A stretch of DNA of 64,000 nucleotides from Oopsacas minuta (GCA_024704765.1 JAKMXF010000066.1:1-64000), one strand, 5' to 3'; shown: positions 10,601-48,099, counted from the stretch's first letter. Numbers and translations are program-made. The notes: a model not told the origin generated them from the sequence alone.

Positions 10601-11502
10601 CGGCACTATTCTCATTATTCTACTATAGTCATTAGCAATCAGTGATCACTTTCCCACCCTTCAGATAAATCCCTCTTTTATAGAACTTTCTTCAATACTT
10701 AGTAATGGCCAAATTACAGCTTTCTTGTGTGCTTTATCGTCTGTAGTACTTTCTTCGAATAGTTCTGAATCAGTATCTTCACCTTAATGTCACAATTTTC
10801 TGCTTCATCGTATAATTCTTCATTAGCCTATGAAAACCCACTTTTGGTGTTAATTACTTTCCTCATTTTCTATTGTAATTGTAAGAGCATGGTAAGTACT
10901 TGTATTTAAATAAAGTCACACGTCCAAGATCCGGGCAACATTTTTCCAACAATTTCGAAATTTATTTGAATATTTTGAGCTAATTTCTCTTAAAATTGAG
11001 TTTTCTTCAATTGTATTTCATTATACAAACAAGCAACCTTATGGTATCATCGTTTGATATGCCAAAAGGTGTGAAATGATTAACGAAGCATCTAGATAGC
11101 TACTGATAATATAATATTAGGTTTCGATTGACCGAATACTGAATGCTGATATTGATTATTCGGTTAGTAACCAAATCTCAACTCTTCGACAAAATATTAT
11201 CCGTTTAAACCGTTAAACTGGATATTGAACTATTCGGTTGTAACTTATTACTCATATCCATCTGGACTAGGAAGGAATTTCCGCCTACTTAATGATTTGC
11301 ATTGATAATGTAGATGTTGTATTCCCAAGTTCCAAGGAATCTTATAGCATGTTAGATATAGGTTTCAACAGCTGTCAGGATAATTTTACTAATTTCGGGG
11401 AGGATCTGATTCTGACATTATCAGAGCATGATATTTACAAACTCTTGGATTTTTCATATGTTTAATTCTATTTCACTATTTCTAATTAGTTTCGTTAATA
11501 TT

Positions 11503-14500: not shown

Positions 14501-15585
14501 TAAGATTTATCATAGAAGCTCTGAAGGAAGAGAGAGCTAGCTGTAGCAGAATGAGACATTCTAAGGAGCAGTGTATACACATGAAGTGTATAAGTACTCA
14601 TAATATCAATGTAAGGAATCTAGAAGGAGTACAGGGTAGAGAGTATGATCTTATTATCGTCAATACCGTCAGGACGATTTCAGAAATCAATGAAGATATG
14701 CCCATTGAGGACAGAGTTGATTTAGGTCTGTTAGATGACGTCACACAGTTTAACACTATCCTAACTAGAGCTAGAGGCTGGGTGTTAGTTATAGGAGATA
14801 TGGATTGTCTGCTTAAAGTAGGAGAATGTTCTTATGTCTGGAATAAGTACGTTGAGGCCTGTGATAACGTAAATGGGTTATTTAGATGTGCTGAAGAGTT
14901 CGATGGTTTCAATATGGAGACTAATATACCTGCAAAGAAATTACAGCCATCAATACGAAAAGAAGCTTCTACACCTGTAACATCAAAACCAAATATAAAA
15001 CCCCCTCCTCTATCACCATATGATATAAAATATAACTCACTCGACACTTTCATGACAACATGTCACCGTGAATTGGATAACTCACAAAACTCAGATGTCT
15101 TAGAAGCTATACAAAAACAATTGAATCTTGCTAAGATAGCACTAGAAACTATGGAATTTCAACGATATACAGAGCAACACTCTATCCTCACTAACTACAA
15201 GATGGAATCCAATTCTCCTGCTAAAGTACAACATGAATCTGATAAATGCATTATAGACAGCAGCCCACCAGTTGTACAACCGAAGATACATGAAATACAA
15301 CATCAACAAACCGATTCTCAAAGTGAGTATCTTTCTACAGCTAGTAAACCCCATGGCGCTGACGCCTACATAGCAGACAATAACCTACCAGCTGAACTAC
15401 CAAAGATACAACAACAACAACAAACGTTCTCTATTCTCCCGAATACCCCTACAGGAGTTCATTCAACACCTCATGTACCTCATGGGGCGACTTATAATCC
15501 AGGATATGTACCAATTACTCAGCCACTGCCGTTGCTGTTTCCACCGGATCTAATCCAACATCAACAGAAACAAGAGCCGAGCTAA
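11503..15585 (+). CDS. HELZ: HELZ-like helicase with zinc fingers (UPF1-like SF1 RNA helicase), single exon
   Basis: Two CCCH fingers ending in AH(N/S)xxELxxW, a C2H2 finger (CVICRKEF...HLFGREH), Walker A ISGPFGCGKT, TKTNSSANLYIE, Walker B DEAAQ, LAGDVYQ, ENFRS, QGREYD, TRAR; Q/P-rich tail. Start placed at ATG 11503; the ORF is open from 11428. Confidence 0.85.
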   Translation: MDSFETYRVCKDCFADTITRILPTLEKYHYRDGKCKTCLREWIGINVGYYNPHRKWCIIRPRPFNSELAMCQYKMRGNCYREWKCRRAHNQLELEIWIEDEKLLMNRKRPSKPKFGCVICRKEFRDSDNLNTHLFGREHETRAKNMWILPEVGSSIHYTGPIRTRPRPPFGKDSYELCRRFARSERCQFGTGCRHAHSMEELKVWMDALTADRYQRQDQRYNFSGRSRGEQSSSSSHMGSMPSEGGASRYPSDSKPPPQSRARQKYSTSAPPNKTEGEPEHVKEVYRRIGDYGIDPCLRYFPKHIKINCDRSLTVTVEENAELKWLFYLKATQHDELHSIVLCDHKKIFTLGEVFRCSTRGSARMEVKQQFVPNRTNYLISQTFDSDSYFEIALKCKPVVGIYKAQIIFLLKDEILVAKEVKVKMHGEGFINVCENFHIATKQPQVRVTMVQDLLKVNWEHNFELINTNKSNLEYQLPNYIEDNIKSGFYDNLPNEISKEFYAKRFHALLYIEEFEHKRSLMRYDLPDQLITFNSVEKQITIENDYGRNYLEVAPGDTRFLSLKLNHRLFEGYRTFRPPKQAYIIPNGTRKAYEYRVCHTGVDYVVLSINADLIRACQTSGGQALVRFAPERKEYVDMHEVLDEVNLPVLFPIHRKVEVPYAWDVDHLLGLLDYEELSLQQKVAVYSIIDSKYQSFPTIISGPFGCGKTKTLCITTKLISRSFHGARILIVTKTNSSANLYIELLQTHFDTITMYREKLGNKKIMFRHFSKSRSLQMDKEMRDFANIEDGTYKGIRFYELEACTIVITTLPALPSLLPPKSRYKSKSLFSHIFLDEAAQVIEPEACLALSFAGNKTKIALAGDVYQTKPLILSKYGKQYNLDESLLHRFELLPEYQTESLQKCKVELTENFRSQETIVQFLSDLFYDESLKANPPSLLGPTSYPALSFLHVSGDEQSLHGFPSFYNKEEAQLTILALKKFIAAGVKVEKIAVLTTYKAQVRFIIEALKEERASCSRMRHSKEQCIHMKCISTHNINVRNLEGVQGREYDLIIVNTVRTISEINEDMPIEDRVDLGLLDDVTQFNTILTRARGWVLVIGDMDCLLKVGECSYVWNKYVEACDNVNGLFRCAEEFDGFNMETNIPAKKLQPSIRKEASTPVTSKPNIKPPPLSPYDIKYNSLDTFMTTCHRELDNSQNSDVLEAIQKQLNLAKIALETMEFQRYTEQHSILTNYKMESNSPAKVQHESDKCIIDSSPPVVQPKIHEIQHQQTDSQSEYLSTASKPHGADAYIADNNLPAELPKIQQQQQTFSILPNTPTGVHSTPHVPHGATYNPGYVPITQPLPLLFPPDLIQHQQKQEPS

Positions 15586-16380
15586 ATATAATATTCCCAT
15601 GAATGAGAAATGAATAACTTGAATTTATTACTAAGTAAGTGTGAACTAATAGCTCCCGTATAGATTAGGCATTTGAGTATATTCAACTCTTACATCTTGT
15701 ATACCCCCAATATGTAATATGCATTTTATTGCTACTTTTTCTATCTTTTCTGATAATTGTTCGAATTTGTTTTGTAGTTTTGTATGCAGTGACGCTAGCA
15801 TCCTCAGTATATCCCATAGGCCAGCTCATCGTCCACGTAATTTGGAATTAACAGAATTTTTAAAATCACTCCTTCGTGAGTTATTAAATTAACTCCCAAC
15901 GTCCCATGCATAGTCGATAAATTATTTATACAATTATTCACGTTACAATCTAAAATGATTGATTGTGGAGTCGAAATTGGGTTTTCTTACTAAATTTCTA
16001 CTGAGGGTATCTGAGGGTATCTGGAAAAACTGAATTCAAATATTTCTCATATGGAAAAGTATTACGGAGAAGTATTTATTAAGACCTTGCTTATGGAGTT
16101 TCAGGGGCTTATTTACGAAAATTATTTGCCTAACTTAGAATTGACATAATGTTTTGGTTAAATTGTCCTAGAACGATCCTCAAAATCTTGGTAGAAAATC
16201 CAAATCTTATCATTGGTGAAGAATCATTTGTTCCAAACAATTTCAGAATTTTATTTATTTCAAACTTCACCAAGAGTATACTTAAAAACCATTCAAAATT
16301 GCTGTATCTATTATCCAATTTGCTAATGTTTACAGATATCTGTGCTAGATTCTCTATTGTACTCAATCAGAGAGACAGAA

Positions 16381-19300
16381 ATGGATGAACTTTCTCGATC
16401 TTTAAATCTACCCTCATCTCCTACCCGATTGACCCTTCTCGATGCTATTTCTCTTGATTGCGATATGAATAATGCACTTTCTTCCAAATCTGATCTTCCG
16501 CGTTATATGTTGAGAAGAATTATGCTTCTCGATACATCAAGCAGAAAGCTGCCAAATATTGGTGGACAAGTCAATACTCCCAGAATTGTTAACTCAAATC
16601 CATTATCATCTTTCTTGGATGAAGATGAAGATGACGATCTAATTCATCCAATGGATATATTCCTATATTTGTTCCAGATATCAACTCCTAGCTTTAGGCA
16701 AACTATTGTCAATCAGGTAGCTAAATGTCAGCTGTCACTCCCACTCATAACTCATGATAGTGACAAGAATGAGGTTGTTTTGAATCATTTTGCCTTCCAA
16801 ACTCTTGTTTTGAATCGTTATGTAGATGGAAATGATGCCAAGTGTTTTTCCGTTCTGGAAGAACCTATCCCAATTGTATCATTCATCAGAGTTGGAGATT
16901 GCGATAACAGTCAAAAATCAGAATTATTAAATAGAATACTAAATGTAAGACACGAGTATTTTTCTCACAGCAATTGTCCTGATAGTACGAAAAAGCGATT
17001 TCTTCTGAATGGGACAGTTGAAATTGCTTGGTATTTACCAAAGTATAGGGAAAATATTAACATCAATCATCATTTTGTTTTGCTTAATCTTAGAGGAGAT
17101 GCCAGTCTATATACAAAACAGAGTAATTTTATCGGTGAAATATCTAATTTAGTTTATGTATTTGTTCCGCTATCAAAGCTGACACACGAAATGTCCTGTC
17201 AGTTAGAAAAATTTAAAGAACACTTTAAATCTAAAGTAATATTTCTCGTTTATAAAACAAAATCTCAGAAAAATCCTGCCATTAAAGTAATTCCGAACAT
17301 TTTGAATGATGAAAATAGTACAATAGCTCTTCACAAGAAAAACCTCAGCGAAGACTCAGGTCGCATTGCTAAATCTATCTCACTTTTTTTGGATAGCACC
17401 AACCATCCTCCTATCCCATTGTCACAATGTATCCAGAGAGCGCTTGATACTGGAATAATGAGTGATCTTATAAAGAATGATATAAAGTTGAGACAGGAAT
17501 TTGTTTATTCGATTTGCGATGATTTTCCTTGTTATGCCCCAGATGAATTAAATCCGAGCCCGATGGCAAATATGAAAGACAAATTATTGCCTCTCCAGGG
17601 TTATTTCAGGAACTGGGCAGAATCTAGCAGAGAATTGCAGCTCCTAGCTGGTAGTAAAAGAAATGTGGAAGAACACATTAACACCGCTCAAAAGAAACAA
17701 CAGGAAGCTAGGTTGTCACAAATACAGAAACTATCCAAACCTTCAAGTTTGATATGTGGGATAATGAATCAATGTCATAAATACTCTACTGATAAAAATG
17801 AAATTCTAATATTTTTTGAATTGCTTGAAGACAAATTAAATACCATTTCTAGCAAATATCTTCCTATATTATACAATCAGTACAAGAAATGGCTAATGGA
17901 ATCTTATTCAAAACAGCCAGACTCAATACCTTTAGCAGAAAGAGATGCCAAACAACAACAAGCAAAACGAAAGTTAGCCGAAGCTGCAGAATGCATAACT
18001 CGTTCTTCACTAGGTATAGAGCATGTATTTCGTGAATTAGGTCAAATTTATGAAGCCTTTATTAGTAGCAACGATGCAAAATTGAAAACTTCTATAAAGA
18101 ATAGACTCAAATTCCGTCCAACTCTCCTACCAGATATTATAGCCAATTTAATTATTCAAGGACATTCATTTGAAATTCTTAATGGAGATGACAATCATAT
18201 TCCTCTCATGTGGGTTTCTGACGTACTATCAAAACTCTCTAAGATTTTAGGTACAGACAAGAAATTGTTCGTGATTTCTGTACTCGGAATTCAAAGTAGT
18301 GGAAAGTCAACATTGCTGAATACAATGTTTGGTATTAAATTCCCAGTTTCATCTGGCCGCTGTACTCGTGGAGTGTTCCTGCAAATGATTCCAATTACTG
18401 AGGAACTCAAAAATAAAATTGGATTTGATTTTCTTTTCCTACTCGACACAGAGGGACTTCGGGCTCCAGAATTGTCTGGAGGCCTCTCCTATAGGAGAGA
18501 CAATGAATTGGCTACCTTTACTGTCGGGTTAGCGGATTTAGCTCTGATTAACATAAAAGGCGAGAGTCACTCAGAAGTTCAGGACATCTTGCAAATAATC
18601 GTAATTGCATTCATGAGAATGAAACTAACCTCAAATAAACCGAAATGCATTTTTGTACATCAAAACGTTGGTGACCCTCAAGCCAAACTCAGCTTAATGA
18701 TAGCAAGGAATAATCTTATTGATACTTTGAATGAAATGACTGTATGTGCTGCTCAACAGGAAAACAAAGAATTGCAATTTTCCAAGTTTTGTGATGTCAT
18801 AGAATTTAATCCTGAGGAAGACGTGTTTTACTTTCCAAGCCTCTTTGAAGGAGAACCCCCTATGACTTCTATCGCTCCTGGATACATAGAGAGAGCACAG
18901 GAATTGCGTACGAAGATTATAACAAGTATTTCTTATCAAAATAGACAATATCAAATTATCAGAGAGTGGAAGCGAAAATTACTAGATATTTGGAATTCTG
19001 TTTTGAAAGAAAACTTTGTATTCAGTTACAAAAATATTCTCGAGGTTAATGCTCGTGTTGAATTAGATAATGCATTGTGTTATTGGCATTCATTCTTTAT
19101 TCAAGAAATGGCCGCTGTCAAATCCGGACTTTTGAATAGACTCTATAATGTTGAGTATGAATCGCTTCAAGATACTATGCAAAGGATTCAAGTTGAGCTG
19201 CATACAATGTTGGCTGATACAGATTCACACTGTGATAGAATTATTGACTACTTTTTCATACAACATGGAAAGAAAGCTATATTTGAGCAATGGCGATATC

Positions 19301-21258
19301 AAACTGAGCAATTTTTCATATGTTGTAAGGAAAAAGAAATACGAAAAATTTTAGAAGATTGTGAAACTATCTGCAAAGTTGGAAAACAGAAACAAGATAT
19401 AGATTCCAAATTTCGTGATTATCGTAAGGAGATAGTTTTTGAAGTACGTCGGATTTTTGATAGTTCCAGAGATCAGGAATCATTTGATATTCCTGGTTAT
19501 ATGGATAGTAAATTTGAAATACTTTGGAAAAACTGGAAGTCCCCTTTTAATGATACTTCATGTTTGGGAAATACTGATATTTCATATGATTTACAACAAA
19601 TTCTCTTTGAATCTTCTCAATTAAAACAACTCGACGTATTTAGTTCGAGGAAAGATTACATCTTCGATAAAAATAAATTTAAGTTGGTTGGTATGGGTGA
19701 ATTTAGTGAGATTTCTAAGAATCTATCTAAAAATGAAGGAGAATTTAGTTATTATCAAGTTTTGGATTACCAAAACAGCATTTGGAGTTTTGGAGAAATT
19801 ATGAATTTTTTCTCTCGTAAAGAGAATGAGCCAAACGCGATTCAGCGGAAGCTGCAGTCAATTCTAATTGATCAAACAAATACGATTGATGAAACAATCA
19901 GAAAACTTCCTAACAATTCGAATTACTCTGCTAATTACTTTTGTATTTTGATAGACAAATGTATTACCCTCATTTATGAACACAACAAATCTGAAAAGCT
20001 TACTAACGCTCGTCAGTCAATCATACTCAATAATTATTACATATTTGACTTCGTATTTTATCAATGTTGTAGAGCAATAAAACAATTTGAAAGTTTACAA
20101 GAAAATTTTTTAGAACAAAACAGTTTAGAATTAAAACTTGAAGAACTAGAATCTATTTTGAAAGAAAATTTTTTTCACCTCTGTACAGGCATTAAATCAG
20201 AAAATATTTGCGCTAATCAATTAGCTTCAATTACATTAAAAGGAATGAGAACTTATCTCGAAGATACTGTAATTCAAAATCTACAAAAACTATTTATTAA
20301 CACCTCCGAATATAAAACTATTTATTCCAGCAGAGCATCTCTCCAGCTTTCTATCCTGAAGCACTTAGCTAAAAAGAAGGATTTTGACTCCTATATTTCG
20401 TATATCAACTCTCCATTCATTTATATCAGTACTTATATAGAATCGAATATTCTAGAATATTCTCAGAGACTATCTACCATTAATAGCTTATTTGTTGATG
20501 TAACTCAATCTGCTCATCATTTCAAGACTCGCTGTATTAATGCAGCAATATCTGCAAATACTCAAGACATACAGTCATGGGATGGATGGAAACGACATTT
20601 CCATGATGCTATTGTTAAGGTTGTTAGGAAAGTTAAGCTGAGTGACTTGGATATTCTGGATTTATATAATGTAAATAATTACCAACATTTCTCAGAATTA
20701 TTTTCGCAATCATTAAATAGATCAATGGAACAGTTTGAATGGAAAGCTTGGGTGGAAGAGATTTTGAATTCTTATCAATATAAAGAGATCAAAGATAATA
20801 TTGCAAATACAATAATAGAATGTAGAGCTTTGTGTCCATTCTGTCGAGAACCTTGCCAGCTATCAGCTGGAGAACATGAACATTATTGTGGAACATTCCA
20901 TAGACCTCAAGGGATCAGTGGATGGCATTACAAAGAATCTAAGCAAATAGCTCTTGAAGAATGTACCAAAGATGTCCTATATAAAAATAAATTTCTATAT
21001 CACAAGAAAAGTTACAATTACTCAGATTATCGTACAGTTAATGAGTATTTCAATTCCTGGAGGATTCTAGGAGAAGATTCAATTGAAGCTAAATACTGGC
21101 AATGGGTCTTATACACTTTTCATAAGGAATTTGTTGATCACTATGGATTGGTGGGAAATGAAGAGATCGACATTGGATGGGTCCATCTTAATGAGGAAGA
21201 GGTTATTGATGATATTGAGAGGCATTATCAAAATTATGTTTTTAAGACAATCTTTTAG
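16381..21258 (+). CDS. GVIN1: Very large inducible GTPase (GVIN1/URGCP family, VLIG-type G domain), single exon
   Basis: G1 VLGIQSSGKSTLLNTMFG, G2 SGRCTRG, G3 LLDTEGLRAPEL, DNELATF; N-terminal IHPMD and LAKCQ-like motifs; C-terminal CPFCREPC...HEHYC..FHRPQG. First ATG at 16381. Confidence 0.9.
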   Translation: MDELSRSLNLPSSPTRLTLLDAISLDCDMNNALSSKSDLPRYMLRRIMLLDTSSRKLPNIGGQVNTPRIVNSNPLSSFLDEDEDDDLIHPMDIFLYLFQISTPSFRQTIVNQVAKCQLSLPLITHDSDKNEVVLNHFAFQTLVLNRYVDGNDAKCFSVLEEPIPIVSFIRVGDCDNSQKSELLNRILNVRHEYFSHSNCPDSTKKRFLLNGTVEIAWYLPKYRENININHHFVLLNLRGDASLYTKQSNFIGEISNLVYVFVPLSKLTHEMSCQLEKFKEHFKSKVIFLVYKTKSQKNPAIKVIPNILNDENSTIALHKKNLSEDSGRIAKSISLFLDSTNHPPIPLSQCIQRALDTGIMSDLIKNDIKLRQEFVYSICDDFPCYAPDELNPSPMANMKDKLLPLQGYFRNWAESSRELQLLAGSKRNVEEHINTAQKKQQEARLSQIQKLSKPSSLICGIMNQCHKYSTDKNEILIFFELLEDKLNTISSKYLPILYNQYKKWLMESYSKQPDSIPLAERDAKQQQAKRKLAEAAECITRSSLGIEHVFRELGQIYEAFISSNDAKLKTSIKNRLKFRPTLLPDIIANLIIQGHSFEILNGDDNHIPLMWVSDVLSKLSKILGTDKKLFVISVLGIQSSGKSTLLNTMFGIKFPVSSGRCTRGVFLQMIPITEELKNKIGFDFLFLLDTEGLRAPELSGGLSYRRDNELATFTVGLADLALINIKGESHSEVQDILQIIVIAFMRMKLTSNKPKCIFVHQNVGDPQAKLSLMIARNNLIDTLNEMTVCAAQQENKELQFSKFCDVIEFNPEEDVFYFPSLFEGEPPMTSIAPGYIERAQELRTKIITSISYQNRQYQIIREWKRKLLDIWNSVLKENFVFSYKNILEVNARVELDNALCYWHSFFIQEMAAVKSGLLNRLYNVEYESLQDTMQRIQVELHTMLADTDSHCDRIIDYFFIQHGKKAIFEQWRYQTEQFFICCKEKEIRKILEDCETICKVGKQKQDIDSKFRDYRKEIVFEVRRIFDSSRDQESFDIPGYMDSKFEILWKNWKSPFNDTSCLGNTDISYDLQQILFESSQLKQLDVFSSRKDYIFDKNKFKLVGMGEFSEISKNLSKNEGEFSYYQVLDYQNSIWSFGEIMNFFSRKENEPNAIQRKLQSILIDQTNTIDETIRKLPNNSNYSANYFCILIDKCITLIYEHNKSEKLTNARQSIILNNYYIFDFVFYQCCRAIKQFESLQENFLEQNSLELKLEELESILKENFFHLCTGIKSENICANQLASITLKGMRTYLEDTVIQNLQKLFINTSEYKTIYSSRASLQLSILKHLAKKKDFDSYISYINSPFIYISTYIESNILEYSQRLSTINSLFVDVTQSAHHFKTRCINAAISANTQDIQSWDGWKRHFHDAIVKVVRKVKLSDLDILDLYNVNNYQHFSELFSQSLNRSMEQFEWKAWVEEILNSYQYKEIKDNIANTIIECRALCPFCREPCQLSAGEHEHYCGTFHRPQGISGWHYKESKQIALEECTKDVLYKNKFLYHKKSYNYSDYRTVNEYFNSWRILGEDSIEAKYWQWVLYTFHKEFVDHYGLVGNEEIDIGWVHLNEEEVIDDIERHYQNYVFKTIF

Positions 21259-39041: not shown

Positions 39042-39217
39042 AATACTATTCTCATTTTAGTACAACTCCTATAGGGAGATCTGCAAATGGCATGTAGTGG
39101 CGTAACCATTGGCTTTGTCCTCATTATCCTTTGAACCTTTATTCATAACAGTGGTTTCCCCAGTAAATGATCACTAATATTCGCTACACTATTTGGTTTT
39201 GTAGATTTCTATTACAA

Positions 39218-41338
39218 ATGGACTATTCATCTTCTACTCCGAAGAAGAAGAAGAGAGATCAGAATTTAGTTCGTTCTATCGAGGCTGATTTAGATCGTCT
39301 GAGGGATGAGGTGTTACGAACTCGTGAAGAATTAGAATATGAGAAGACAATCCGTAGAACTGCTGAAGAGCAATTGAACCAAGCTAGTCAACATAAGTTT
39401 TCAGATTCTCAGAGTCTAGAGGCAAAACTACAGCAAATGCAATCACAATTGGAAGATTCTAACATGGCAGTAGCTAAGTTATCAGCTGAGAAAGCTGACC
39501 TAATGATTCAGTTGGAGTTGACCGGAAGTGATCTGGTAGCAGCTGAGGCTAAACTTAGAAAAATGCAGAAAGATCATTCAACTAACTTACAGGATAAATC
39601 TGAGTTATTGGAGGAAATCAATCAGTTGGTTGACGTCATGAACTCTGAGAAGAGCAAGTATGAGCAGGAATTAGCCGAGCTGAGTAAATTACGAAATGAT
39701 AATTCTAACAAATTACGGAATAAGAATGAAGCAGTAGAGGAATATCAGAGAGAGATCGGAGATAGAGATGTCATATTAAAGAGACTTCAATTTGAGTCTG
39801 AGGCTTTGAAGACAAAACTTGATGATTCTATCCTTGTATCTGATAACCAGAAATTGAAAATCAAAGAATTAGAGAAGATAGAAGTAGAACAAACTTCTCT
39901 GAGAGACAACCTATCTCAACTTAGAAAACTAAATAAGGAATTGGTGGAGACTAACAATAGACTTCTAGAAAATAAGAATCAGCTGTTTGATCATACTATT
40001 CAGGCGGAGCAACAAGAAGCACTCATTTTGAGTCTGAAGGAAGATAAGCTAACTGCTGAGAGGCAAACCCATCGTTTACAGGAACAACTACACTCAAAAG
40101 AGATGGGGATTGAAGATTTAGAGTCTAAGCGTTTGAATACTATGCAGAAGGAGGTGGAACAACTGGCTAGCAGCCTGGGGGAGCTAATGGCTGCTAATAA
40201 CAATCAACAGAATGTAATCTGCTCTCTCCATGATAGTGTTAGGAAGAAAGATACACAATTATCTAATTTGAAATCTTTTAAACAGGATTGTGAAGCTACA
40301 ATAGCTAAGCTACGTTCTGAGTCTTCTGCATTACAGTCTCAACTGTTAGAAGTAGAAACTAACGATGTTAGAGTACATTTACAATCAGAACTAGCTTCAC
40401 TGAATAAGTTGAGAAGCGAGGATGAAGAGAAAATGAAATGTATTATTAGTCAGAATAGAACTATTGAGAATCAGAAACAAGAAGTTATAAAAAGTTATTC
40501 TAAATTAGTGGAAGAGAATAATAAGAGATCTCTACAGCTTAGCAAACTTAAACAAAGAGCTAAACAGCAAGAGACAGAAAACACAACTCTCAAAGATAAG
40601 TTACTACAATCTGAAACTGTAATGCGGACACAATCTAACGATATAGACAACTTGAAGGAAGCTCTTAAAATACAAAGCAATCGAAAAACCTCTGTGACAA
40701 CCAGACCTGAGAAATCTACATATTCAGCTCCCTCTGTTACAGGCAAGAGATCATCTTCAAGTCACTCCATAGACTACTCCTCTGGTGACAGAGAACTGCT
40801 CCAGGAGCTCCAAAACCTAAGAGCTTCTTATCATGAAATGCAAAGTGTCTGCAAACAGCTGGAGCATCAGCTGGCTGATGAACGGAGTCAGAAAGATAAC
40901 ATGTTTGACTCCAATCAACTACAACAGATCGAGAGACCCGCGAATGAAGGAGTCCGTACTGAACAGAACATGACAGATACTCACGTTTGGTATCAGGATA
41001 GGATTTATAATTTGGAGAATGAGTTGGCAATTGCTAAATGTTCATCGGAAAATCTTGCTAAGGCCAACAAATTTTACGAAATAAATTTGGAAGATGAGAG
41101 TCAGAAGAGAATCAATCAAGGACAAGAAGCACGTAAACTAATGCAGGAGAGTAGAGAAACAATTCGCGAGCTTAGAGAACGCACCAGTCAAGCCGAAGAT
41201 GACCAAACTCATTCTCAGAGAGTAATTTCTCAGTTATCTCAGAGGCTAATCAAGTCTATACAAGACTACAAATATCTACAGGAAATATCTATGACAAGAT
41301 GTCAGGAGTTAGCTCTAGAGGCTAAACCAAAGATGTAA
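39218..41338 (+). CDS. Long coiled-coil protein, unknown family; possibly exon 1 of the gene continuing at 50955
   Basis: About 700-aa E/K/Q/L-rich ORF with heptad character and an N-terminal basic cluster PKKKKR. It ends in AT|GTAACA, which is either a stop or a splice donor. A possible acceptor lies at 39203-04. Confidence 0.8.
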   Translation: MDYSSSTPKKKKRDQNLVRSIEADLDRLRDEVLRTREELEYEKTIRRTAEEQLNQASQHKFSDSQSLEAKLQQMQSQLEDSNMAVAKLSAEKADLMIQLELTGSDLVAAEAKLRKMQKDHSTNLQDKSELLEEINQLVDVMNSEKSKYEQELAELSKLRNDNSNKLRNKNEAVEEYQREIGDRDVILKRLQFESEALKTKLDDSILVSDNQKLKIKELEKIEVEQTSLRDNLSQLRKLNKELVETNNRLLENKNQLFDHTIQAEQQEALILSLKEDKLTAERQTHRLQEQLHSKEMGIEDLESKRLNTMQKEVEQLASSLGELMAANNNQQNVICSLHDSVRKKDTQLSNLKSFKQDCEATIAKLRSESSALQSQLLEVETNDVRVHLQSELASLNKLRSEDEEKMKCIISQNRTIENQKQEVIKSYSKLVEENNKRSLQLSKLKQRAKQQETENTTLKDKLLQSETVMRTQSNDIDNLKEALKIQSNRKTSVTTRPEKSTYSAPSVTGKRSSSSHSIDYSSGDRELLQELQNLRASYHEMQSVCKQLEHQLADERSQKDNMFDSNQLQQIERPANEGVRTEQNMTDTHVWYQDRIYNLENELAIAKCSSENLAKANKFYEINLEDESQKRINQGQEARKLMQESRETIRELRERTSQAEDDQTHSQRVISQLSQRLIKSIQDYKYLQEISMTRCQELALEAKPKM

Positions 41339-43742
41339 CATATATTTTACAAACACTCCAGAGACACTTCTATTTTCAATTCCAATCATACTTCCTCCAC
41401 TCAGCCTCATTGGGTATTCTTGTTAACTTTATTACTCTATCAGTTTAATATTATTATATCACTTAATATGCCAGTATATATTATTATGAATATAGACCTC
41501 TATCTTTTCCGGTATCAGGTCCAGTCTTGAGGTTACTTTTATATTTTATTTTTCTAGACTATAAATCAGTAGATTGTATGGTTTACTTGTTGTGAACGTT
41601 CTAAAGAGCTACGTATATTTGTGTTAATACCGCTTTCCATCCCTGACTGTTCTTCTCTATCCACCCAATCTCAGACACAACTCATGTTGAATTACGGTTT
41701 TGACCATGAATATGCTATATTTGCTATTACACCACAGATTCTATGAGTATTTTGGATTCTACTTTAGAATACTTACACTATGGAACCTGGAAATAATCCT
41801 ACTCTGGATCTGAGTACGTACGTCTCTAACCGGATTATATATTGAAAAGGCATTGGAAGGTTGCTAACTGCTAAATGTGTACTCCTTTCCTCAGAGTTAC
41901 ATGTTACTCGTCTTGTGTTAATCGGCTGTGTAAGGGTGATACCTTTGGTCACCTTATACCTATATGCAATGGCAGAGGTAAGTTTATATGCGTTTTATGA
42001 GATTTTTGTTTATTACAAGCGCATTTTCATTGGTTTAGCGCAGCTCATAAAAGGGGATGCACTAATGGCATAGACGTTGTGCGACGTCCGCGCGGCCGTG
42101 CAAAATAAACCCTCTTGGTAAACACTAAAACTGTTGCTATACGTATATGCCAAAGTATGTTGCACAACTGTAACTAATATAAAGTAGTTATGTATAAGTA
42201 CGAATGCATTCCTACTGATTCCTAAGGTACAAGAAATCTCATACACCAACACTCATCTAGAACTTGTTGCCCACCAGATTGAATTTGTGCTCCCCACACG
42301 ACGCCACTGTTAAATTGGCCACATTGGTCAAAATGCCATTGAATATCAACCTGACCAAAACATGACGTAAAATACCTCTGTGGCTATAGTGTGGCCAATG
42401 GCTTACTTAATACACCGCAGTGTATGTCACCGAGTAGGTCAAAAAATATATGCCCAATTTACTTGTTTAATTTTAAGACAAACTAACGCTCTTTCCATTT
42501 GCCAGTTAAACTTTCTAGGGGTTTCCGTATGTGAATAATTCATTGAAGTAATAAGTTCTAATGACGGTAATCCTTCATTTGGTTAGTTAGGCTCTTTTAA
42601 AATTATACATTAATATTTATATGATTGTTCCTCAAATTTTGAAATTTTCGATTTTTGAGAATTTAACTTATAAAAATTCATTTTACAAATGAAAACCTAA
42701 ACACAATTTAATTAAACTACAGTTATCCCTCACACATACCAACACCAGGATTTCTTAACCTGTGGTCATATGACCAATACACGGCCGTGTATGTCACCAG
42801 AGGCCAAAAAATAGAAGGCGATTTAGTTTTTGAATTTATAAACAAACTAATGCTCTTATCATTTGTCAAATGAACTTTCTAGGGGTATCCGTATATTAAG
42901 AATTTATTGAGACTACTTTTGCAAGTTCTTACGGTCATTCATATGGTTTAGGCTCTATTTAATGATGACGTCACCATTCTAAATAATATGTAATTTGTAT
43001 ATACACTATGATAATAATGTGATTTTGAATTGAAACAATTTTTGCACAACAATGAATTTATCCCACAATTTGATGTAGAATTCAACCATTGAGTCCAATT
43101 TTCAGAAACTGAAAGTTACAAATTCATAGATGTATTTTGTTACTATGACTGCTTTTGACCATATTTGTACGATTACTATCCATGGCCAGCATAACTGGTC
43201 CCCATCCAGACAGTCTAGTCATGACTGGAGCAATACATTTGCCTGTACGAATCTGCCTTAGCTGCCTATTGATCTATTCTCCTACTACACCAATGATTCG
43301 GTAGAATTGTGACCCATAGGTACGAGTTACACTCACTCGGTTGGACTATTTCAAAGCTCTTTGAATTAGACACGCCATAGTTTAAAATTAAGTCATGTTA
43401 ATATATATGACGAGGCCTTATCAACCATGCTATTCTAATGCCCTTGTTATATATATGTATTGTAATAAATATCTTATTGATTACATCTGAGCATTGTACT
43501 TGAGATTGGGAAAGCATGAGCATTACTTATTATGTAATATCTAATACTTATCTTTATCTAAAATATCCAGATCGAATCGAAGTATATATTCTTACTTGAA
43601 TAATGATGGAATTATGCAAATACGATGGAATAATCCCTGAGAAATTAGTGGTTTATCTATCAGTGCAATCTGAAAGTAACTAATAGGTGTATTATATAAA
43701 TTGGAGAAATCGAGAGATGAGCTAAGTATACTTTTATCGAAA

Positions 43743-44852
43743 ATGTCAGATCAGTTGCTGCGTATATCCTTTTTCATAATGATAAGTATTACCTCATTGT
43801 TACTAACAATCGTGTTTTGTTTTTGGTTTGTGTATTTGTTTGATGCAGTACAACGTAAATGGAGAATTTATAGAAGAGCCTTGAAGAGTTTCCGACAAAA
43901 CAAATGTGAAATTCATCAACAAATTATTATATACGAATCTAAAACAGAATTTGTTAAGAATGTTTTCCTCTTTTATATGAATTTGGTGGAATGGCTAGCG
44001 ATACTTTTCGGTTGTCTAGCATATATGCTTAATTTCATACAGTACATCATCCAGGATGAAACTCTCAAGTATAGTAGTGATAATGTTACCTCCAGGTTCC
44101 CCTTGAATCTATTGTTTATCACTACTAACAGAATACCTTATAGCCTGCTCACTATAAATATCTTTCCTACTTATTCAGCCATTTTTATTGTCCTAAGATT
44201 AATTCTAATCGCAAGTCTCTGTAAGTATTTAGCAGCGAGATATGCTCACGTCAGCTGGATAATAGCAGATAAAATTCCATTTTTGCTGTGTTTCTTTTTG
44301 TTTATCTCGATAATCATTCAGTTCCTTGCATCTCATTGTTCTGTCCATATCTTTGCATCATGGTGCTCCTGTCTATTAGAAATGATATCACTGTTAATTG
44401 CTTTCAAACAGTATCGAAGGCTAAGCATGGTATTAAATTGGTCAATTGTTGATTTGAAGGTTAGGCAGAATAAAGAATTGCTTGAGAAACATATTGGAAC
44501 AAAGGCAAGGTACATCAGATTATTCACATGTTTTTGGATAGGAAGTTTTCTAGTTATAGTTTCTCGAATAAGTGAAAGTATAGCATTCATGATGATAGTA
44601 ATACTTCGCAACACTGATACATCCCATGGATACTTCTCCCTTTGTAGGAACTCAAACTTTCTTAACCACATGTCTTATGATATTATTGCTATCTCATCTT
44701 GGGTTTGTTTACTTCTAGGGGTATTTGGATATTTATTTCTTATTATCCCTTATCTTGGATTTGGACTATCAACAATGTTTGTCGTTCTATGGCGATTGCA
44801 CAAAGGGAAATCTAATTATCAGGTGCGATATCAGAATATTCTCCACGTATAA
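43743..44852 (+). CDS. Orphan multi-pass (about 7 TM) membrane protein, single exon
   Basis: Seven hydrophobic segments in 369 aa; no DRY, NPxxY or other GPCR family signature recognised. Confidence 0.75.
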   Translation: MSDQLLRISFFIMISITSLLLTIVFCFWFVYLFDAVQRKWRIYRRALKSFRQNKCEIHQQIIIYESKTEFVKNVFLFYMNLVEWLAILFGCLAYMLNFIQYIIQDETLKYSSDNVTSRFPLNLLFITTNRIPYSLLTINIFPTYSAIFIVLRLILIASLCKYLAARYAHVSWIIADKIPFLLCFFLFISIIIQFLASHCSVHIFASWCSCLLEMISLLIAFKQYRRLSMVLNWSIVDLKVRQNKELLEKHIGTKARYIRLFTCFWIGSFLVIVSRISESIAFMMIVILRNTDTSHGYFSLCRNSNFLNHMSYDIIAISSWVCLLLGVFGYLFLIIPYLGFGLSTMFVVLWRLHKGKSNYQVRYQNILHV

Positions 44853-44969: not shown

Positions 44970-46067
44970 TTACATATCTATCAATTGGATATAATCGTTA
45001 TGCAGTATCTTATCCAAGATATATTTGGGAATAGAGGTCAGGTATTCAATTGCCTCTATTTCTAATTTTCTCTTAACTTCTCCCATCTTTGTGAGTTCAT
45101 CTTGTGCAGGTCTACTGAGTTTTGGTAAAAATGTTTTAATATTACTTTTATGTATGCTATGATCTGATTTGTTCCATTCCATCCAAACATGCTGGGGAAT
45201 AGCTTTAGAATCAGTCACATCAGAGAAATGCACTCCCATCCATTTGATATTTATCGTATAGTGTGCTGTTTCTAATCCTAACCCGAAAGAGCCAAATCTA
45301 TATGTGAATAGAATTCTAACTCCATGAGGATTATAATCAAACAGACCGAGAAATGGGACGGATAGATCCTCTTCAAGCTTTTTTAGTATCTTTCTAGCTC
45401 CGAGTGAAGGGTATCCGCATCCAGTAAATATTACGCATGGAATTTTTTCCCATATACTGTCCTCACAGAGCAGATTGAATATGGCGTCTTTCTCAACTAC
45501 TATGACGTATCTAGCTCCAAGAGATTTGAATTTTACTTCTTTTACAGAACCAGGCAATCTCTTACCGCCGAGAGAAGTATTAGAACAGTCGCAATACAGC
45601 CCTGGTTCAATCCACTGTACAAGACCAGCAATAGCTCCAGAACTGCTTCCTATTATCCCTAAACATTCTCTTTGACATTCAAATAAACCCATTATGTCTA
45701 CGAGCCTTTTGGAAAATTCACTTTGATTTGAGAAAAAGGTTTTAAGAAAGTAATAAGCTTCCCTCAGAGTGACTTCTTTGTCAGAAGTAACAACCATGTG
45801 AATGTAGTTAATTACAATCCAAAGTTTTACATATTTATTCGATAGTTGTTTCGATTTCTTGGAGAGGAGGGTCTTTTCCTTTTTCTTTTTACCACAATGA
45901 AGAATTCCAGAATCGTTTAGAATGTAATTATCTTTGCTATTTACAAGGAGAGATAAAGGAAGATCTTTCTCTTGAGACAGTTCTCTCGCAATGCTCAGTG
46001 CTAGTAGTTCTATTTTATTGAGTATTTCACCTTTTAATAGATAATTTGCTGTCACAATATTCTGCAT
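44970..46067 (-). CDS. SPO11: SPO11/TopoVIA-family meiotic nuclease with SPO11-2-type signatures, single exon
   Basis: Catalytic Tyr motif VTLREAYY, toprim ARYVIVVEKDAIF, IPCVIFTGCGYP, FDYNPHG, FGSFGLGLE..HY..NIKW, KLEIEA. Confidence 0.93.
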   Translation of the reverse strand: MQNIVTANYLLKGEILNKIELLALSIARELSQEKDLPLSLLVNSKDNYILNDSGILHCGKKKKEKTLLSKKSKQLSNKYVKLWIVINYIHMVVTSDKEVTLREAYYFLKTFFSNQSEFSKRLVDIMGLFECQRECLGIIGSSSGAIAGLVQWIEPGLYCDCSNTSLGGKRLPGSVKEVKFKSLGARYVIVVEKDAIFNLLCEDSIWEKIPCVIFTGCGYPSLGARKILKKLEEDLSVPFLGLFDYNPHGVRILFTYRFGSFGLGLETAHYTINIKWMGVHFSDVTDSKAIPQHVWMEWNKSDHSIHKSNIKTFLPKLSRPAQDELTKMGEVKRKLEIEAIEYLTSIPKYILDKILHNDYIQLIDM

Positions 46068-47667
46068 ATTTTCAGTACCTTTAGTATACTCAATATTATT
46101 TTAATTATTATACTATTCAAGACATACTTCTATGGCATGAACATCTGTATTTGATTGTGTGGCTTAAATCAACTCGAAATATCGACAATATGAAGGTATT
46201 AGCATCCAGACGTATGAATTTCCTAAAATATAGCTACATCTATGACCATTAGAACCTTACTAAAAACAGCTCAGAAAGAATGTTGAAATTCTTTTTAATG
46301 ATTAAAGTACTTCAATAATTGCATTCTGTAAGCCAATGATTATAGAATTATTATTATTATCGGTGATATATTCTTGTATTTCGATTTTACATCAGTGTGT
46401 GGGCCCCAAGGACGGATTCAATTCAGAGTTAATTCCCATACTCAGCCCTTTAATTCCAGAAATCAAGGGCTTAATTCCCATTCCCATTCCTTGGAATGAG
46501 AATTACTGGGGGTGACAACCTTTTGAGCCTTCGGGCTAAATTGAGTTATTCAGCCTAATACCTAAGCCAAACGATAGAGCATACGTGATAACAGAATCAA
46601 ATCTCTAATTTTCCTATTGACAGTTCATGCAGAGGGCAAATAATCTCCAAAGGTAGGTGCGTATATGCCTGCAAAGTACTTTATAAATGAGAGAAAATAC
46701 GTAAAGTACTCATGTTTCTCAAAATTTCTGAATATACTCAACTAAACTCAACAAAGTATAATATACACAAGTTACTGAGTAATCAAAATAGTGGATTGAA
46801 ATAAACAAAAACAACAATTAGCGTTTGTCATAGCATTCTTAGAATGTTCTGCACTTGTTTGATCTATTAATTCGATAAAAATTCTTCCATCACACCCAAT
46901 AAAGCTTCAAAATACAAATCGCAAGAAGTACGGACACTAAGCAGGCCAAAATTCCAATCAACAATCGTAATAGTGTGGTAAATGCAAAAATACAACAATT
47001 AACGATTATTATTACCTATTCGAATTCTATAAAAATACTTACACAAAATTGCCTTAGATTATAAAAATCAGTGTATTTGGAATTATTTTGTAAAATTTGA
47101 ATCGATTTGGATTTTTTCGATATTTGCAATTTTCTCATATAAATTATGTTAAAATGAGGCGAAACTAACATTTGATTGATTATTTTAATGGCAGATTATG
47201 ATTTGTAAAAATACAATGTGCATGCATAGTTATCACTATACATATATATATATATATATATTGAACTATCTATTCTACCATCCAATCGAGGAATATTTTG
47301 AAAAATTATATTTGTTATTATGATCATTATTTAAATAAAATCTATAATTAGGAACCTAGACTCGGGGCTGGGGATTGGTAGGGCCTGAGTCATGTACAGC
47401 ACTTTTCTATTAGTCTCTGTGGAGAGCAGAATTATTGGTATGTTCATAGCCTCACCAACCCTACCATTGCCTACGCCATGTATAATATTATGACTTTATC
47501 AATTTGTAAACCAAATATTGACATAAGATTGGGGGGGCGTCCTCCCCCCACGCCACTGCGAATAGTTCATATTCGGTATTCTGTTGAATAAGAAAGAATA
47601 TTATCAGTATTCGTATCATCTTCCAAATTGTTTTACGTATTTTTAATCCGAGCTGAGCGAGGAAAAA

Positions 47668-47820
47668 TATAAATTACAATCTTTCCGACAGCTATCAATT
47701 ATATGTTTAAAAAGTGGCACTATGTGTGCTCGGGTTAAACCTCTCCAATTATTAGTGCCACGTTTTTTAAACAATTTTAATTGACAGACTAAGCTGTCAG
47801 CACATATTGTAATTTTATAT
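47668..47820. repeat. Palindromic MITE family D, diverged copy 2
   Basis: Shares AAAAAGTGGCACTATG, CTCCAATTA-TAGTGCCA and GACTAAGCTGTC with 29449-29637. Confidence 0.7.
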
Positions 47821-48099
47821 TTTTTCCGCTTAACTTCTTGGTTATTTGTTAGGGAATAAACTTGTCGTAGATTATACCACTTACAAATTAATCACTGTTT
47901 CTCTACCTTTGTCGAACAGTGGCACACTCATTTCACTTAATATTTTCAATGCACAATTGTAAGAGTGAATACGACTATAGTAAAACTATGGTGTCAATAT
48001 CTCCAAGAGATAATTATAAGATAATGGTGTGTAAATATTGGTGTTATTAATTACTGTGTGCCTTCTGTTCCTGAAAGTGAAAACAAAAAATTGTTCTTT

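What the first reader, a model, noticed from the sequence alone, without database searches (positions are those of the whole stretch)
44970..46067. SPO11-2-type paralogue in an animal gene neighbourhood
Diagnostic positions follow plant/protist SPO11-2 as I recall it (ARYIIIVEKHAIF, IPC, GYP, DWNPAG, FGSIGMGLE..RY..NVKW, EPG...DCS, KYI..KI....YI) rather than animal SPO11-1 (AKFVLIVEKDATF, GVPD, DADPHG, YGSMSM) or TopoVIA/SPO11-3 (GQPD, DSDPYG). Here: ARYVIVVEKDAIF, IPC, GYP, DYNPHG, FGSFGLGLE..HY..NIKW, EPGLYCDCS, KYILDKILHNDYI. SPO11-2 is classically described as lost in animals and fungi. Its presence among TRAF, HELZ and GVIN genes suggests retention of the ancestral SPO11-1/SPO11-2 heteromeric break machinery in an early-branching animal, or replacement or transfer. 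Recent surveys should be checked for prior reports.
Basis: partly seen in the sequence, partly recalled or inferred. Interest (0 to 1): 0.8.

Follow-up and report, generated by a model that had tools for sequence, protein, structure and literature searches.

The report
SPO11-2 gene in a sponge
This sponge genome carries an intact, selectively maintained gene for SPO11-2, the second meiotic DNA-breaking enzyme that plants and many protists have but that papers up to 2026 describe as absent from animals; matching genes exist in other sponges and in comb jellies.

Summary
Window 44970-46067 (-) is one uninterrupted 365-aa ORF encoding a complete Spo11/TopoVIA A subunit (TP6A_N plus Toprim). It keeps catalytic Tyr106, Arg102, Glu192 and Asp244, and has Asn246 in place of the second Asp of DxD. 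In a site-heterogeneous ML tree the protein and 12 sponge and ctenophore relatives form one group (99/96) inside the SPO11-2 clade (100/100), together with named plant and oomycete SPO11-2. They are separate from named animal SPO11, which includes a sponge (Oscarella) SPO11-1. AU tests reject grouping with animal SPO11-1 (p 3e-74), with all SPO11-1 (5e-9) or with TopoVIA (4e-6). This survives removing the signature columns, and each protein half on its own also places the group within SPO11-2. The gene lies among animal genes, shares neighbours with a related species, and is under purifying selection (dN/dS about 0.09). Contamination, including from an archaeal symbiont, is excluded. Surveys from 2022 to 2026 state that SPO11-2 is absent from animals. 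Only an unremarked GenBank label (Geodia) hints otherwise. Not settled: whether SPO11-1 and TOPOVIBL coexist with it in this genome (heterodimer versus SPO11-2 alone), expression, and whether unicellular relatives of animals have it. This scan's notes held no earlier SPO11 finding.

The parts
44970..46067 (-). Complete single-exon coding sequence (365 aa plus stop) of an SPO11-2 orthologue
   Evidence: ORF; Pfam TP6A_N plus Toprim; placement in the SPO11-2 clade 100/100; AU tests; dN/dS 0.086 against the related species' gene in L001
45654..45836 (-). Winged-helix / 5Y-CAP domain (aa 78-138) carrying the catalytic motif TLREAYY
   Evidence: Pfam PF04406, E 6e-11; most constrained part of the gene, dN/dS 0.04 for aa 76-170
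45750..45752 (-). Codon TAC for Tyr106, the predicted DNA-cleaving tyrosine (Arg102 lies four residues before it)
   Evidence: R102 and Y106 are invariant columns in the alignment with named SPO11-1, SPO11-2 and a TopoVIA-like sequence; codon read directly from the sequence
45039..45509 (-). Toprim metal-binding domain (aa 187-343)
   Evidence: Pfam PF21180, E 3.9e-34; this half alone rejects SPO11-1 and TopoVIA placements, p-AU <= 1e-9
45492..45494 (-). Codon GAG for Glu192, the Toprim glutamate (VVEKDAIF)
   Evidence: Invariant column E192; codon read from the sequence
45330..45338 (-). [quoted passage not shown]
   Evidence: Sequence. DYNPHG is present in all 53 sponge/ctenophore relatives. 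In the 69-row alignment this column is N in every S2 and N row and D in every SPO11-1 and TopoVIA row; Rhodelphis, which has D there, was not assigned to any of those groups. Allen & Maxwell 2024 (PMC11302465) report DxN only in SPO11-2

Best explanation
The ORF is a functional, vertically inherited orthologue of SPO11-2 in a sponge. An earlier scan note says the sponge is the glass sponge Oopsacas minuta; I did not verify this. SPO11-2 is one of the two meiotic paralogues of the topoisomerase-VI A subunit that arose early in eukaryote evolution. Shown here: it encodes the full two-domain A subunit with the cleaving tyrosine (Tyr106), Arg102, the Toprim Glu192 and Asp244, and the SPO11-2-specific Asn246. 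It is under purifying selection. It has orthologues in demosponges, a calcareous sponge and ctenophores, and their tree matches the species tree. It belongs to the SPO11-2 clade, not to animal SPO11 (SPO11-1) or TopoVIA. Inferred from what is established for Arabidopsis SPO11-2 and the TopoVI-like complex: two A subunits, held by a TopoVIB-like subunit, cut both DNA strands. Each tyrosine attacks one strand with Mg2+ bound in the partner's Toprim pocket, leaving the protein covalently attached to the 5' ends, and this starts meiotic recombination. The partner could be SPO11-1, giving a plant-like asymmetric heterodimer, or a second SPO11-2, as assumed for lineages that have only SPO11-2. Which applies is undecided. 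Evolutionary inference: the last common ancestor of animals still had SPO11-2, and it was lost on the line to cnidarians and bilaterians.
For: Domains and residues. Closest relatives are sponge and ctenophore proteins, all with DYNPHG. After these, the best hits among 1.84 billion representatives are DxN proteins of a diplonemid, a glaucophyte, a plant, a malawimonad, Mesostigma and Phytophthora 'SPO11-2'; DxD proteins start about 15 orders of magnitude lower in E-value. Anchors named by their sources: plant SPO11-2 and SPO11-1; animal SPO11 including Hydra, Nematostella, Acropora and the sponge Oscarella. Careful IQ-TREE (LG+C20+F+G4 PMSF, 69 x 390): SPO11-2 split 100/100, sponge+ctenophore group 99/96, SPO11-1 99/92, TopoVIA 99/91. 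AU tests: with animal SPO11-1 dlnL 119, p 3e-74; with all SPO11-1 p 5e-9; with TopoVIA p 4e-6. Still rejected after deleting 8 signature columns; both protein halves place it in SPO11-2. Diagnostic columns: group matches 69% of SPO11-2-specific, 13% of SPO11-1-specific and 11% of TopoVIA-specific positions. Genomic authenticity: animal genes on both sides; shared 723-aa and HlyIII neighbours in a related species; exact Logan contig across gene and flanks, and a second organism/study with the gene at about 97-98% identity and no indels. Selection: dN/dS 0.086. Fold: ESM Atlas model of this exact protein pTM 0.85, TM 0.90 to a streptophyte Spo11/TopoVIA cluster.
Against: No expression data: no RNA run holding the gene was found. 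No partner identified: SPO11-1 and TOPOVIBL could not be searched for in this genome. Among sponges I recovered a canonical SPO11-1 only from Oscarella. The window's clade sits on a long stem (1.23 substitutions/site), so some change of function cannot be excluded. All sponge/ctenophore members have lost the Asp and Thr of the near-universal G(Y/Q)PDxxTR motif, with unknown consequence. Unchecked notes of this scan suggest MEI1 and possibly MEI4 and MCMDC2 are decaying in this genome (s1-315878, s1-315911). If true, that would fit poorly with a canonical DSB machinery. Deep branching inside the SPO11-2 clade is weakly supported (72-88), so vertical descent through opisthokonts is inferred from parsimony, not shown.
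Confidence: 0.8

Rival explanations
1. It is a true SPO11-2 orthologue but has a non-meiotic or altered role in sponges and ctenophores, for example a somatic genome-maintenance function, as proposed for Plasmodium SPO11-2, which is essential in asexual stages. Meiotic breaks would then be made by SPO11-1 alone.
For: Allen & Maxwell 2024 (PMC11302465) summarise Plasmodium data for a meiosis-independent SPO11-2. Long stem branch of the window's clade. Lineage-specific loss of the PDxxTR Asp/Thr. A sponge (Oscarella) has a canonical SPO11-1.
Against: All catalytic residues are kept and dN/dS is 0.086. Where SPO11-2 function has been tested (Arabidopsis, as cited in PMC11302465 and PMC12203943; Leishmania, PMC13143177) it is required, with its catalytic tyrosine, for meiotic recombination or genetic exchange. 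There are no expression data either way.
Confidence: 0.12
2. The gene entered animals by horizontal transfer from a protist carrying SPO11-2, either once into the animal stem or separately into sponges and ctenophores, rather than being retained from the opisthokont ancestor.
For: No fungal, choanoflagellate or other holozoan SPO11-2 was recognised among the labelled hits. The nearest outgroups in the tree are unlabelled metagenomic sequences and a diplonemid group, with weak support of 72-85.
Against: Sponge and ctenophore sequences form one group (99/96) whose internal order follows the species tree. Demosponge copies have spliceosomal introns. Composition and synteny are host-like. A single ancient transfer into the animal stem cannot be told apart from retention with these data, and most top hits could not be labelled, so absence from holozoans is not shown.
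Confidence: 0.07
3. It is not a sponge gene at all: a contaminant (protist, or the TopoVIA of the archaeal symbiont known from glass sponges) or an assembly chimera.
For: The Oopsacas minuta genome paper reports a dominant thaumarchaeal symbiont (PMC10280926), and archaea encode TopoVIA. The best solved-structure match is archaeal TopoVIA.
Against: The archaeal PDB match only reflects the lack of a solved SPO11-2. Grouping with TopoVIA is rejected (p 4e-6). The gene sits on a 1.37-Mb contig between TRAF, WBP11, acetyl-CoA transporter, PAQR and URGCP genes. GC is uniform at about 34%. A Logan contig of the same sample, assembled separately, spans gene plus flanks exactly. Five related assemblies carry orthologues at 67-79% identity; the two loci fetched lie among eukaryotic genes, and one shares neighbours with the window.
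Confidence: 0.01

Closest known systems
Plant SPO11-2 (Arabidopsis AtSPO11-2 family; tested here against source-named orthologues from Ipomoea, Ricinus, Vitis and Nelumbo)
   Same: Same paralogue clade (100/100). Same two-domain layout, catalytic Arg/Tyr and Toprim Glu. DxN in place of DxD. In most sponge/ctenophore members, TQR before the tyrosine instead of TKR. Tyr instead of Trp at the penultimate C-terminal position. About 33% identity over the full length.
   Different: Found in an animal. VEKDA and DYNPHG instead of the plant VEKHA and DWNPAG. The window protein itself has TLR, not TQR. Asp and Thr of GYPDxxTR are lost. Partner proteins and meiotic role are untested.
Protist SPO11-2 (Phytophthora, diatoms, Mesostigma, Cyanophora, malawimonad and diplonemid here; Leishmania and Plasmodium in the literature)
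   Same: Same clade and the same DxN signature. Some of these lineages carry SPO11-2 without SPO11-1, a possible model for sponges if SPO11-1 proves absent (PMC9665070, PMC11302465).
   Different: 28-40% identity. Relationships within the clade are unresolved, so no specific sister lineage can be named.
Animal SPO11 (= SPO11-1: mouse, Nematostella, Hydra, Clytia, and the sponge Oscarella lobularis)
   Same: Same fold and the same predicted chemistry: tyrosine transesterification with Toprim-bound metal within a TopoVI-like complex.
   Different: A different ancient paralogue. TKRD, DxD and a C-terminal Trp. 25-28% identity. AU test rejects a common clade (dlnL 119, p 3e-74).
Archaeal and plant topoisomerase VI subunit A (TopoVIA / SPO11-3; PDB 2zbk, 1d3y, 2q2e)
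   Same: Best solved-structure matches (E 2.6e-22 to 2zbk, aligned over nearly the full length); the ancestral enzyme of the family.
   Different: A true ATP-dependent topoisomerase that works with Top6B. Phylogeny rejects membership (p 4e-6). The group matches 11% of TopoVIA-specific columns (window 1 of 8). GQPD and DxD motifs are not present.

Membership tests
SPO11-2 | Spo11/TopoVIA A-subunit architecture: winged-helix 5Y-CAP domain plus Toprim domain | tested here: met
   Pfam PF04406 (E 6e-11) and PF21180 (E 3.9e-34), both above curated cut-offs; Atlas model pTM 0.85
SPO11-2 | Catalytic tyrosine with the preceding conserved arginine, and the Toprim glutamate and first aspartate | tested here: met
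   R102, Y106, E192 and D244 fall in invariant alignment columns
SPO11-2 | Second Asp of DxD replaced by Asn (DxN), reported as always present in plant SPO11-2, sometimes in protist SPO11-2 and never in other paralogues (PMC11302465) | tested here: met
   D244-Y245-N246. The column is N in 25/25 rows of the S2 and N groups and D in 18/18 SPO11-1 and 12/12 TopoVIA rows; Rhodelphis, placed in the SPO11-2 clade but left out of those groups, has D
SPO11-2 | Phylogenetic placement inside the SPO11-2 clade with named members, the criterion used by Malik 2007 and Allen & Maxwell 2024 | tested here: met
   100/100 split. All rival constraints rejected by AU. Robust to removing signature columns; both protein halves place it in SPO11-2
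SPO11-2 | Required, with its catalytic tyrosine, for meiotic double-strand breaks; expressed in meiotic cells | not testable with these tools
   No RNA run holding the gene was found. Uninterrupted ORFs in two Logan runs of a demosponge-type relative may be transcripts, but the library type is unknown
SPO11-2 | Works with SPO11-1 and a TopoVIB-like subunit (MTOPVIB/TOPOVIBL) | not tested
   The genome outside the window could not be searched. The N-terminal segment that aligns with the B-subunit-binding helix region is present but this was not analysed further
Animal SPO11 (SPO11-1) | Placement with named animal, plant and protist SPO11-1 | tested here: not met
   AU p 3e-74 (with animal SPO11-1) and 5e-9 (with all SPO11-1); window matches 0 of 3 SPO11-1-specific columns
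TopoVIA / SPO11-3 | Placement with archaeal and eukaryotic TopoVIA; NCBIfam equivalog score | tested here: not met
   AU p 4e-6. NCBIfam TopoVIA models score 56-140 bits against cut-offs of 424-675. Window matches 1 of 8 TopoVIA-specific columns

The most novel reading that the evidence does not exclude
The last common ancestor of animals made its meiotic breaks with a plant-like asymmetric SPO11-1/SPO11-2 pair. Sponges and comb jellies still do. Loss of SPO11-2, leaving the familiar single-SPO11 machinery, is a shared derived character of the placozoan-cnidarian-bilaterian line.
Probability: 0.35. Interest if true: 0.8.

Novelty: new member of a known kind. Interest (0 to 1): 0.64.

Why it matters
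Papers from 2022 to 2026 (PMC9665070, PMC11302465, PMC13143177) state that animals and fungi kept only SPO11-1, and that the two-paralogue arrangement survives only in plants and some protists. This gene and its relatives in three sponge lineages and in ctenophores show that statement is wrong for the two earliest-branching animal phyla. That moves the loss of SPO11-2 from the base of the opisthokonts to inside the animals, and implies several independent losses in fungi and in the unicellular relatives of animals. It gives a new presence/absence character that separates sponges and ctenophores from cnidarians and bilaterians. It also makes it testable, in animals, why some lineages need two different break-making subunits and what the DxN half-site does.

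Tried and rejected
- **Divergent animal SPO11-1, or TopoVIA from the sponge's archaeal symbiont:** rejected by ML and AU tests and by the flanking genes.
- **Retrogene, inferred from the lack of introns:** rejected as an inference. Glass-sponge genomes are rich in single-exon genes (PMC10280926, PMC10282587). All six members of the window's clade are single ORFs, two of them confirmed among eukaryotic genes in large contigs.
- **SPO11-1 in lineages that carry SPO11-2:** the last word search used a basal-looking single-ORF SPO11-1 (P0191). It proved to be hydrozoan and returned only one sponge SPO11-1, from Oscarella.
- **JGI metagenome scan with a SPO11-1 profile:** swamped by archaeal TopoVIA. 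Its eukaryotic hits were coral or hydrozoan-like, and no sample overlapped those holding sponge SPO11-2. Nothing can be concluded about absence.
- **Labelling the nearest outgroups of the animal clade (P0093, P0071, P0064):** failed; they are unnamed metagenome or ENA contigs.
- **Mixture-model AU test in treekit:** did not finish at 69 rows. Full IQ-TREE searches timed out. The AU tests reported use fast searches under LG+F+G4 on 37 taxa.
- **Halichondria locus look-up:** found no record.
- **This scan's notes:** contain nothing under 'spo11' or 'topoisomerase'.
- **Handling of restricted material:** Human SPO11 isoforms appeared among listed cluster members and were not used; the mammal anchor was a porcupine sequence.

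Full report
**What is there**

Window 44970-46067 (minus strand) is one uninterrupted ORF of 365 codons. Pfam finds both domains of the Spo11/topoisomerase-VI A subunit: TP6A_N (aa 78-138, E 6e-11) and the Toprim domain (aa 187-343, E 3.9e-34).

The key residues can be read directly from the DNA: Arg102 and Tyr106 in TLREAYY, Glu192 in VVEKDAIF, and Asp244-Tyr245-Asn246 in FDYNPHG. In an alignment with named SPO11-1 and SPO11-2 sequences and a TopoVIA-like representative, R102, Y106, E192 and D244 fall in invariant columns.

The best matches among solved structures are archaeal TopoVIA (2zbk, E 2.6e-22), and yeast Spo11 matches only weakly. This reflects what has been crystallised, not the subfamily. 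NCBIfam TopoVIA equivalog models score far below their cut-offs.

**It is a sponge gene**

- The window has uniform GC of about 31-41%, about 34% around the gene.
- It carries animal-type genes on both sides: a UPF1/HELZ-like helicase, a URGCP/GVIN GTPase, an acetyl-CoA transporter, WBP11, a PAQR/HlyIII protein and a TRAF.
- The protein's own contig is 1.37 Mb.
- In a related species (79% protein identity) the orthologue has the same 723-aa neighbour and the same HlyIII gene nearby.
- In the most distant member of the same clade (67%) it is again a single ORF among eukaryotic genes, on a 2.47-Mb long-read contig.
- Logan contigs of the source sample cover the gene and both flanks with no difference. 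A run from another organism and another study holds the gene at about 97-98% identity without indels, while the neighbouring ORF differs by 7-9%.
- dN/dS against the 79% relative is 0.086, and 0.04 in the winged-helix domain. dS is near saturation at 1.37, so the ratio is approximate.

I did not verify this. It does fit the intron-poor, AT-rich sequence and the position of the window's clade as a separate, fast-evolving sponge lineage. The genome paper for that species reports a dominant thaumarchaeal symbiont (PMC10280926), so archaeal TopoVIA contamination had to be excluded, and it is (see below). Glass-sponge genomes are rich in single-exon genes (PMC10280926, PMC10282587), so the lack of introns does not indicate a retrogene. 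A demosponge-type orthologue has at least four exons.

**Which paralogue**

The word-based search found 53 relatives that all carry LFDYNPHG. They include proteins of Halichondria, Ephydatia and Geodia (Demospongiae), Sycon (Calcarea) and Bolinopsis (Ctenophora). The Geodia entry is labelled 'SPO11-2, partial' by its source.

The exhaustive profile-free search of 1.84 billion representatives then listed, in order, proteins with DxN from a diplonemid, Cyanophora, a plant, a malawimonad, Mesostigma and Phytophthora ('SPO11-2'). Proteins with DxD appear only from about E 1e-35.

Anchors were named from their sources:
- Plant SPO11-2 and plant SPO11-1.
- Animal SPO11 from a mammal, spider, oyster, Artemia and bryozoan.
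- Animal SPO11 from Hydra, Nematostella, Acropora, sea urchin, gar and the homoscleromorph sponge Oscarella lobularis.

A careful IQ-TREE analysis (LG+C20+F+G4 by PMSF, 69 sequences x 390 columns) gave these supports:

| Split or group | Support |
|---|---|
| SPO11-2 (39 rows, including all 13 sponge/ctenophore rows) versus the rest | 100/100 |
| Sponge + ctenophore group | 99/96 |
| SPO11-1 (plants, animals including Oscarella, protists) | 99/92 |
| TopoVIA / SPO11-3 | 99/91 |

AU tests on 37 taxa rejected every rival placement of the sponge/ctenophore group:

| Constraint | dlnL | p-AU |
|---|---|---|
| With animal SPO11-1 | 119 | 3e-74 |
| With all SPO11-1 | 88 | 5e-9 |
| With TopoVIA | 92 | 4e-6 |

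Robustness:
- After deleting the eight SPO11-2 signature columns, including DxN, the group stays within SPO11-2 and all rivals are still rejected (p <= 2e-5).
- The Toprim half alone rejects all rivals (p <= 1e-9).
- The N-terminal half also places the group in SPO11-2. It rejects the animal-SPO11-1 constraint (p 0.003) but not the two broader ones (p 0.06-0.08).
- Both halves agree, so the protein is not a chimera.

A column-by-column count agrees:

| Diagnostic set | Columns | Mean match, sponge/ctenophore group | Window protein |
|---|---|---|---|
| SPO11-2-specific | 8 | 69% | 5 of 8 |
| SPO11-1-specific | 3 | 13% | 0 of 3 |
| TopoVIA-specific | 8 | 11% | 1 of 8 |

GYP and IPC are not specific to SPO11-2.

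**Distribution in animals**

In a tree of all 53 relatives, the roughly 205-aa Toprim fragments from other assemblies all nest among demosponges. The overall shape is ctenophores versus (Sycon, the window's clade, demosponges). That matches the species tree and argues for one origin before these phyla split.

No cnidarian, placozoan or bilaterian member appeared in any search. Cnidarian and bilaterian SPO11-1 were recovered in abundance. This absence is suggestive, not proven.

**What is known**

- Brinkmeier et al. 2022 assign only SPO11-1 to opisthokonts (PMC9665070).
- Allen & Maxwell 2024 state that SPO11-2 occurs only in plants and protists and that DxN is confined to SPO11-2 (PMC11302465). 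Their supplement, as held here, mentions no sponge, ctenophore, cnidarian or placozoan.
- A 2026 Leishmania paper calls the two-paralogue state 'absent in animals and fungi' (PMC13143177).
- Full-text searches for SPO11-2 together with sponge, Porifera or ctenophore returned nothing. The two glass-sponge genome papers do not mention Spo11 or meiosis.
- The only prior trace I found is the automatic GenBank name on the partial Geodia protein.

**How it most likely works**

Shown: an intact, constrained A subunit with all catalytic residues and the SPO11-2 half-site.

Inferred from Arabidopsis and from the TopoVI-like complex (as summarised in PMC11302465 and PMC12203943): it dimerises on a TopoVIB-like subunit and cuts DNA through a 5'-phosphotyrosyl intermediate to start meiotic recombination. 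The dimer would be either with SPO11-1, giving one DxD site and one DxN site, or with itself.

Which applies could not be tested. I could not search the rest of this genome. Among sponges I recovered a canonical SPO11-1 only from Oscarella. A metagenome scan gave no usable co-occurrence data. No RNA run holding the gene was found.

Unchecked notes of this scan report Rec8-like, PRDM9-like, MCMDC2, MEI1 and MEI4 genes in the same genome, some possibly decaying. I list them as leads only.

**Verdict**

This is a new member of a known family in a place where the literature says the family does not occur. It is not a new mechanism, and a database label already hints at it. Interest is therefore substantial but not extreme.

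Noticed in passing
window 43701-44852 (+): 383-aa multi-pass membrane-like ORF with no Pfam hit, convergent with the SPO11-2 gene. It is present in the second organism (run X5) at about 91-93% nucleotide identity, so it is less conserved than SPO11-2.
   Followed up: partly
window 39167-41338 (+); L001 11909-14080: 723-aa ORF without any Pfam family. It is conserved at the same length as the neighbour of the SPO11-2 gene in a related species.
   Followed up: partly
window about 46420-46505 and 47709-47875: Short interspersed repeats. Logan word depth is 4-10 times that of the flanks, with many loose ends and 'goes back' joints.
   Followed up: no
window 45401-45424 (aa 215-222, TGCGYPSL); same position in P0008, P0012, P0017: All sponge and ctenophore SPO11-2 proteins have lost the Asp and Thr of the otherwise near-universal G(Y/Q/F)PDxxTR motif of the family (GYPSLGAR, GYPPLSVR, GYPGLAVR). 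The consequence is unknown.
   Followed up: partly
L004 560-3820; L086 1171-3954: A 5'-nucleotidase gene (PF05761) lies head-to-head with SPO11-2 in two independent demosponge-type assemblies (a Logan run and a JGI sample). This is conserved microsynteny, and different from the window's arrangement.
   Followed up: no
P0068 (1560 aa, from the representatives search): A 1560-residue protein whose N-terminal 390 residues are an SPO11-2-type module (DWNPAG). It could be a fusion or a merged gene model; the organism is unknown.
   Followed up: no
L009 3001-4020: Intronless SPO11-1-like gene (about 39% identical to Oscarella and Owenia SPO11) on a 71-kb, 31% GC metagenome contig of unknown eukaryotic origin.
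   Followed up: no
window 11428-15585 (+) and 16342-21258 (+): Very long single-exon genes (a 1385-aa UPF1-like helicase and a 1638-aa URGCP/GVIN-type GTPase) side by side. This is typical of the intron-poor genome and may be immune-related.
   Followed up: no
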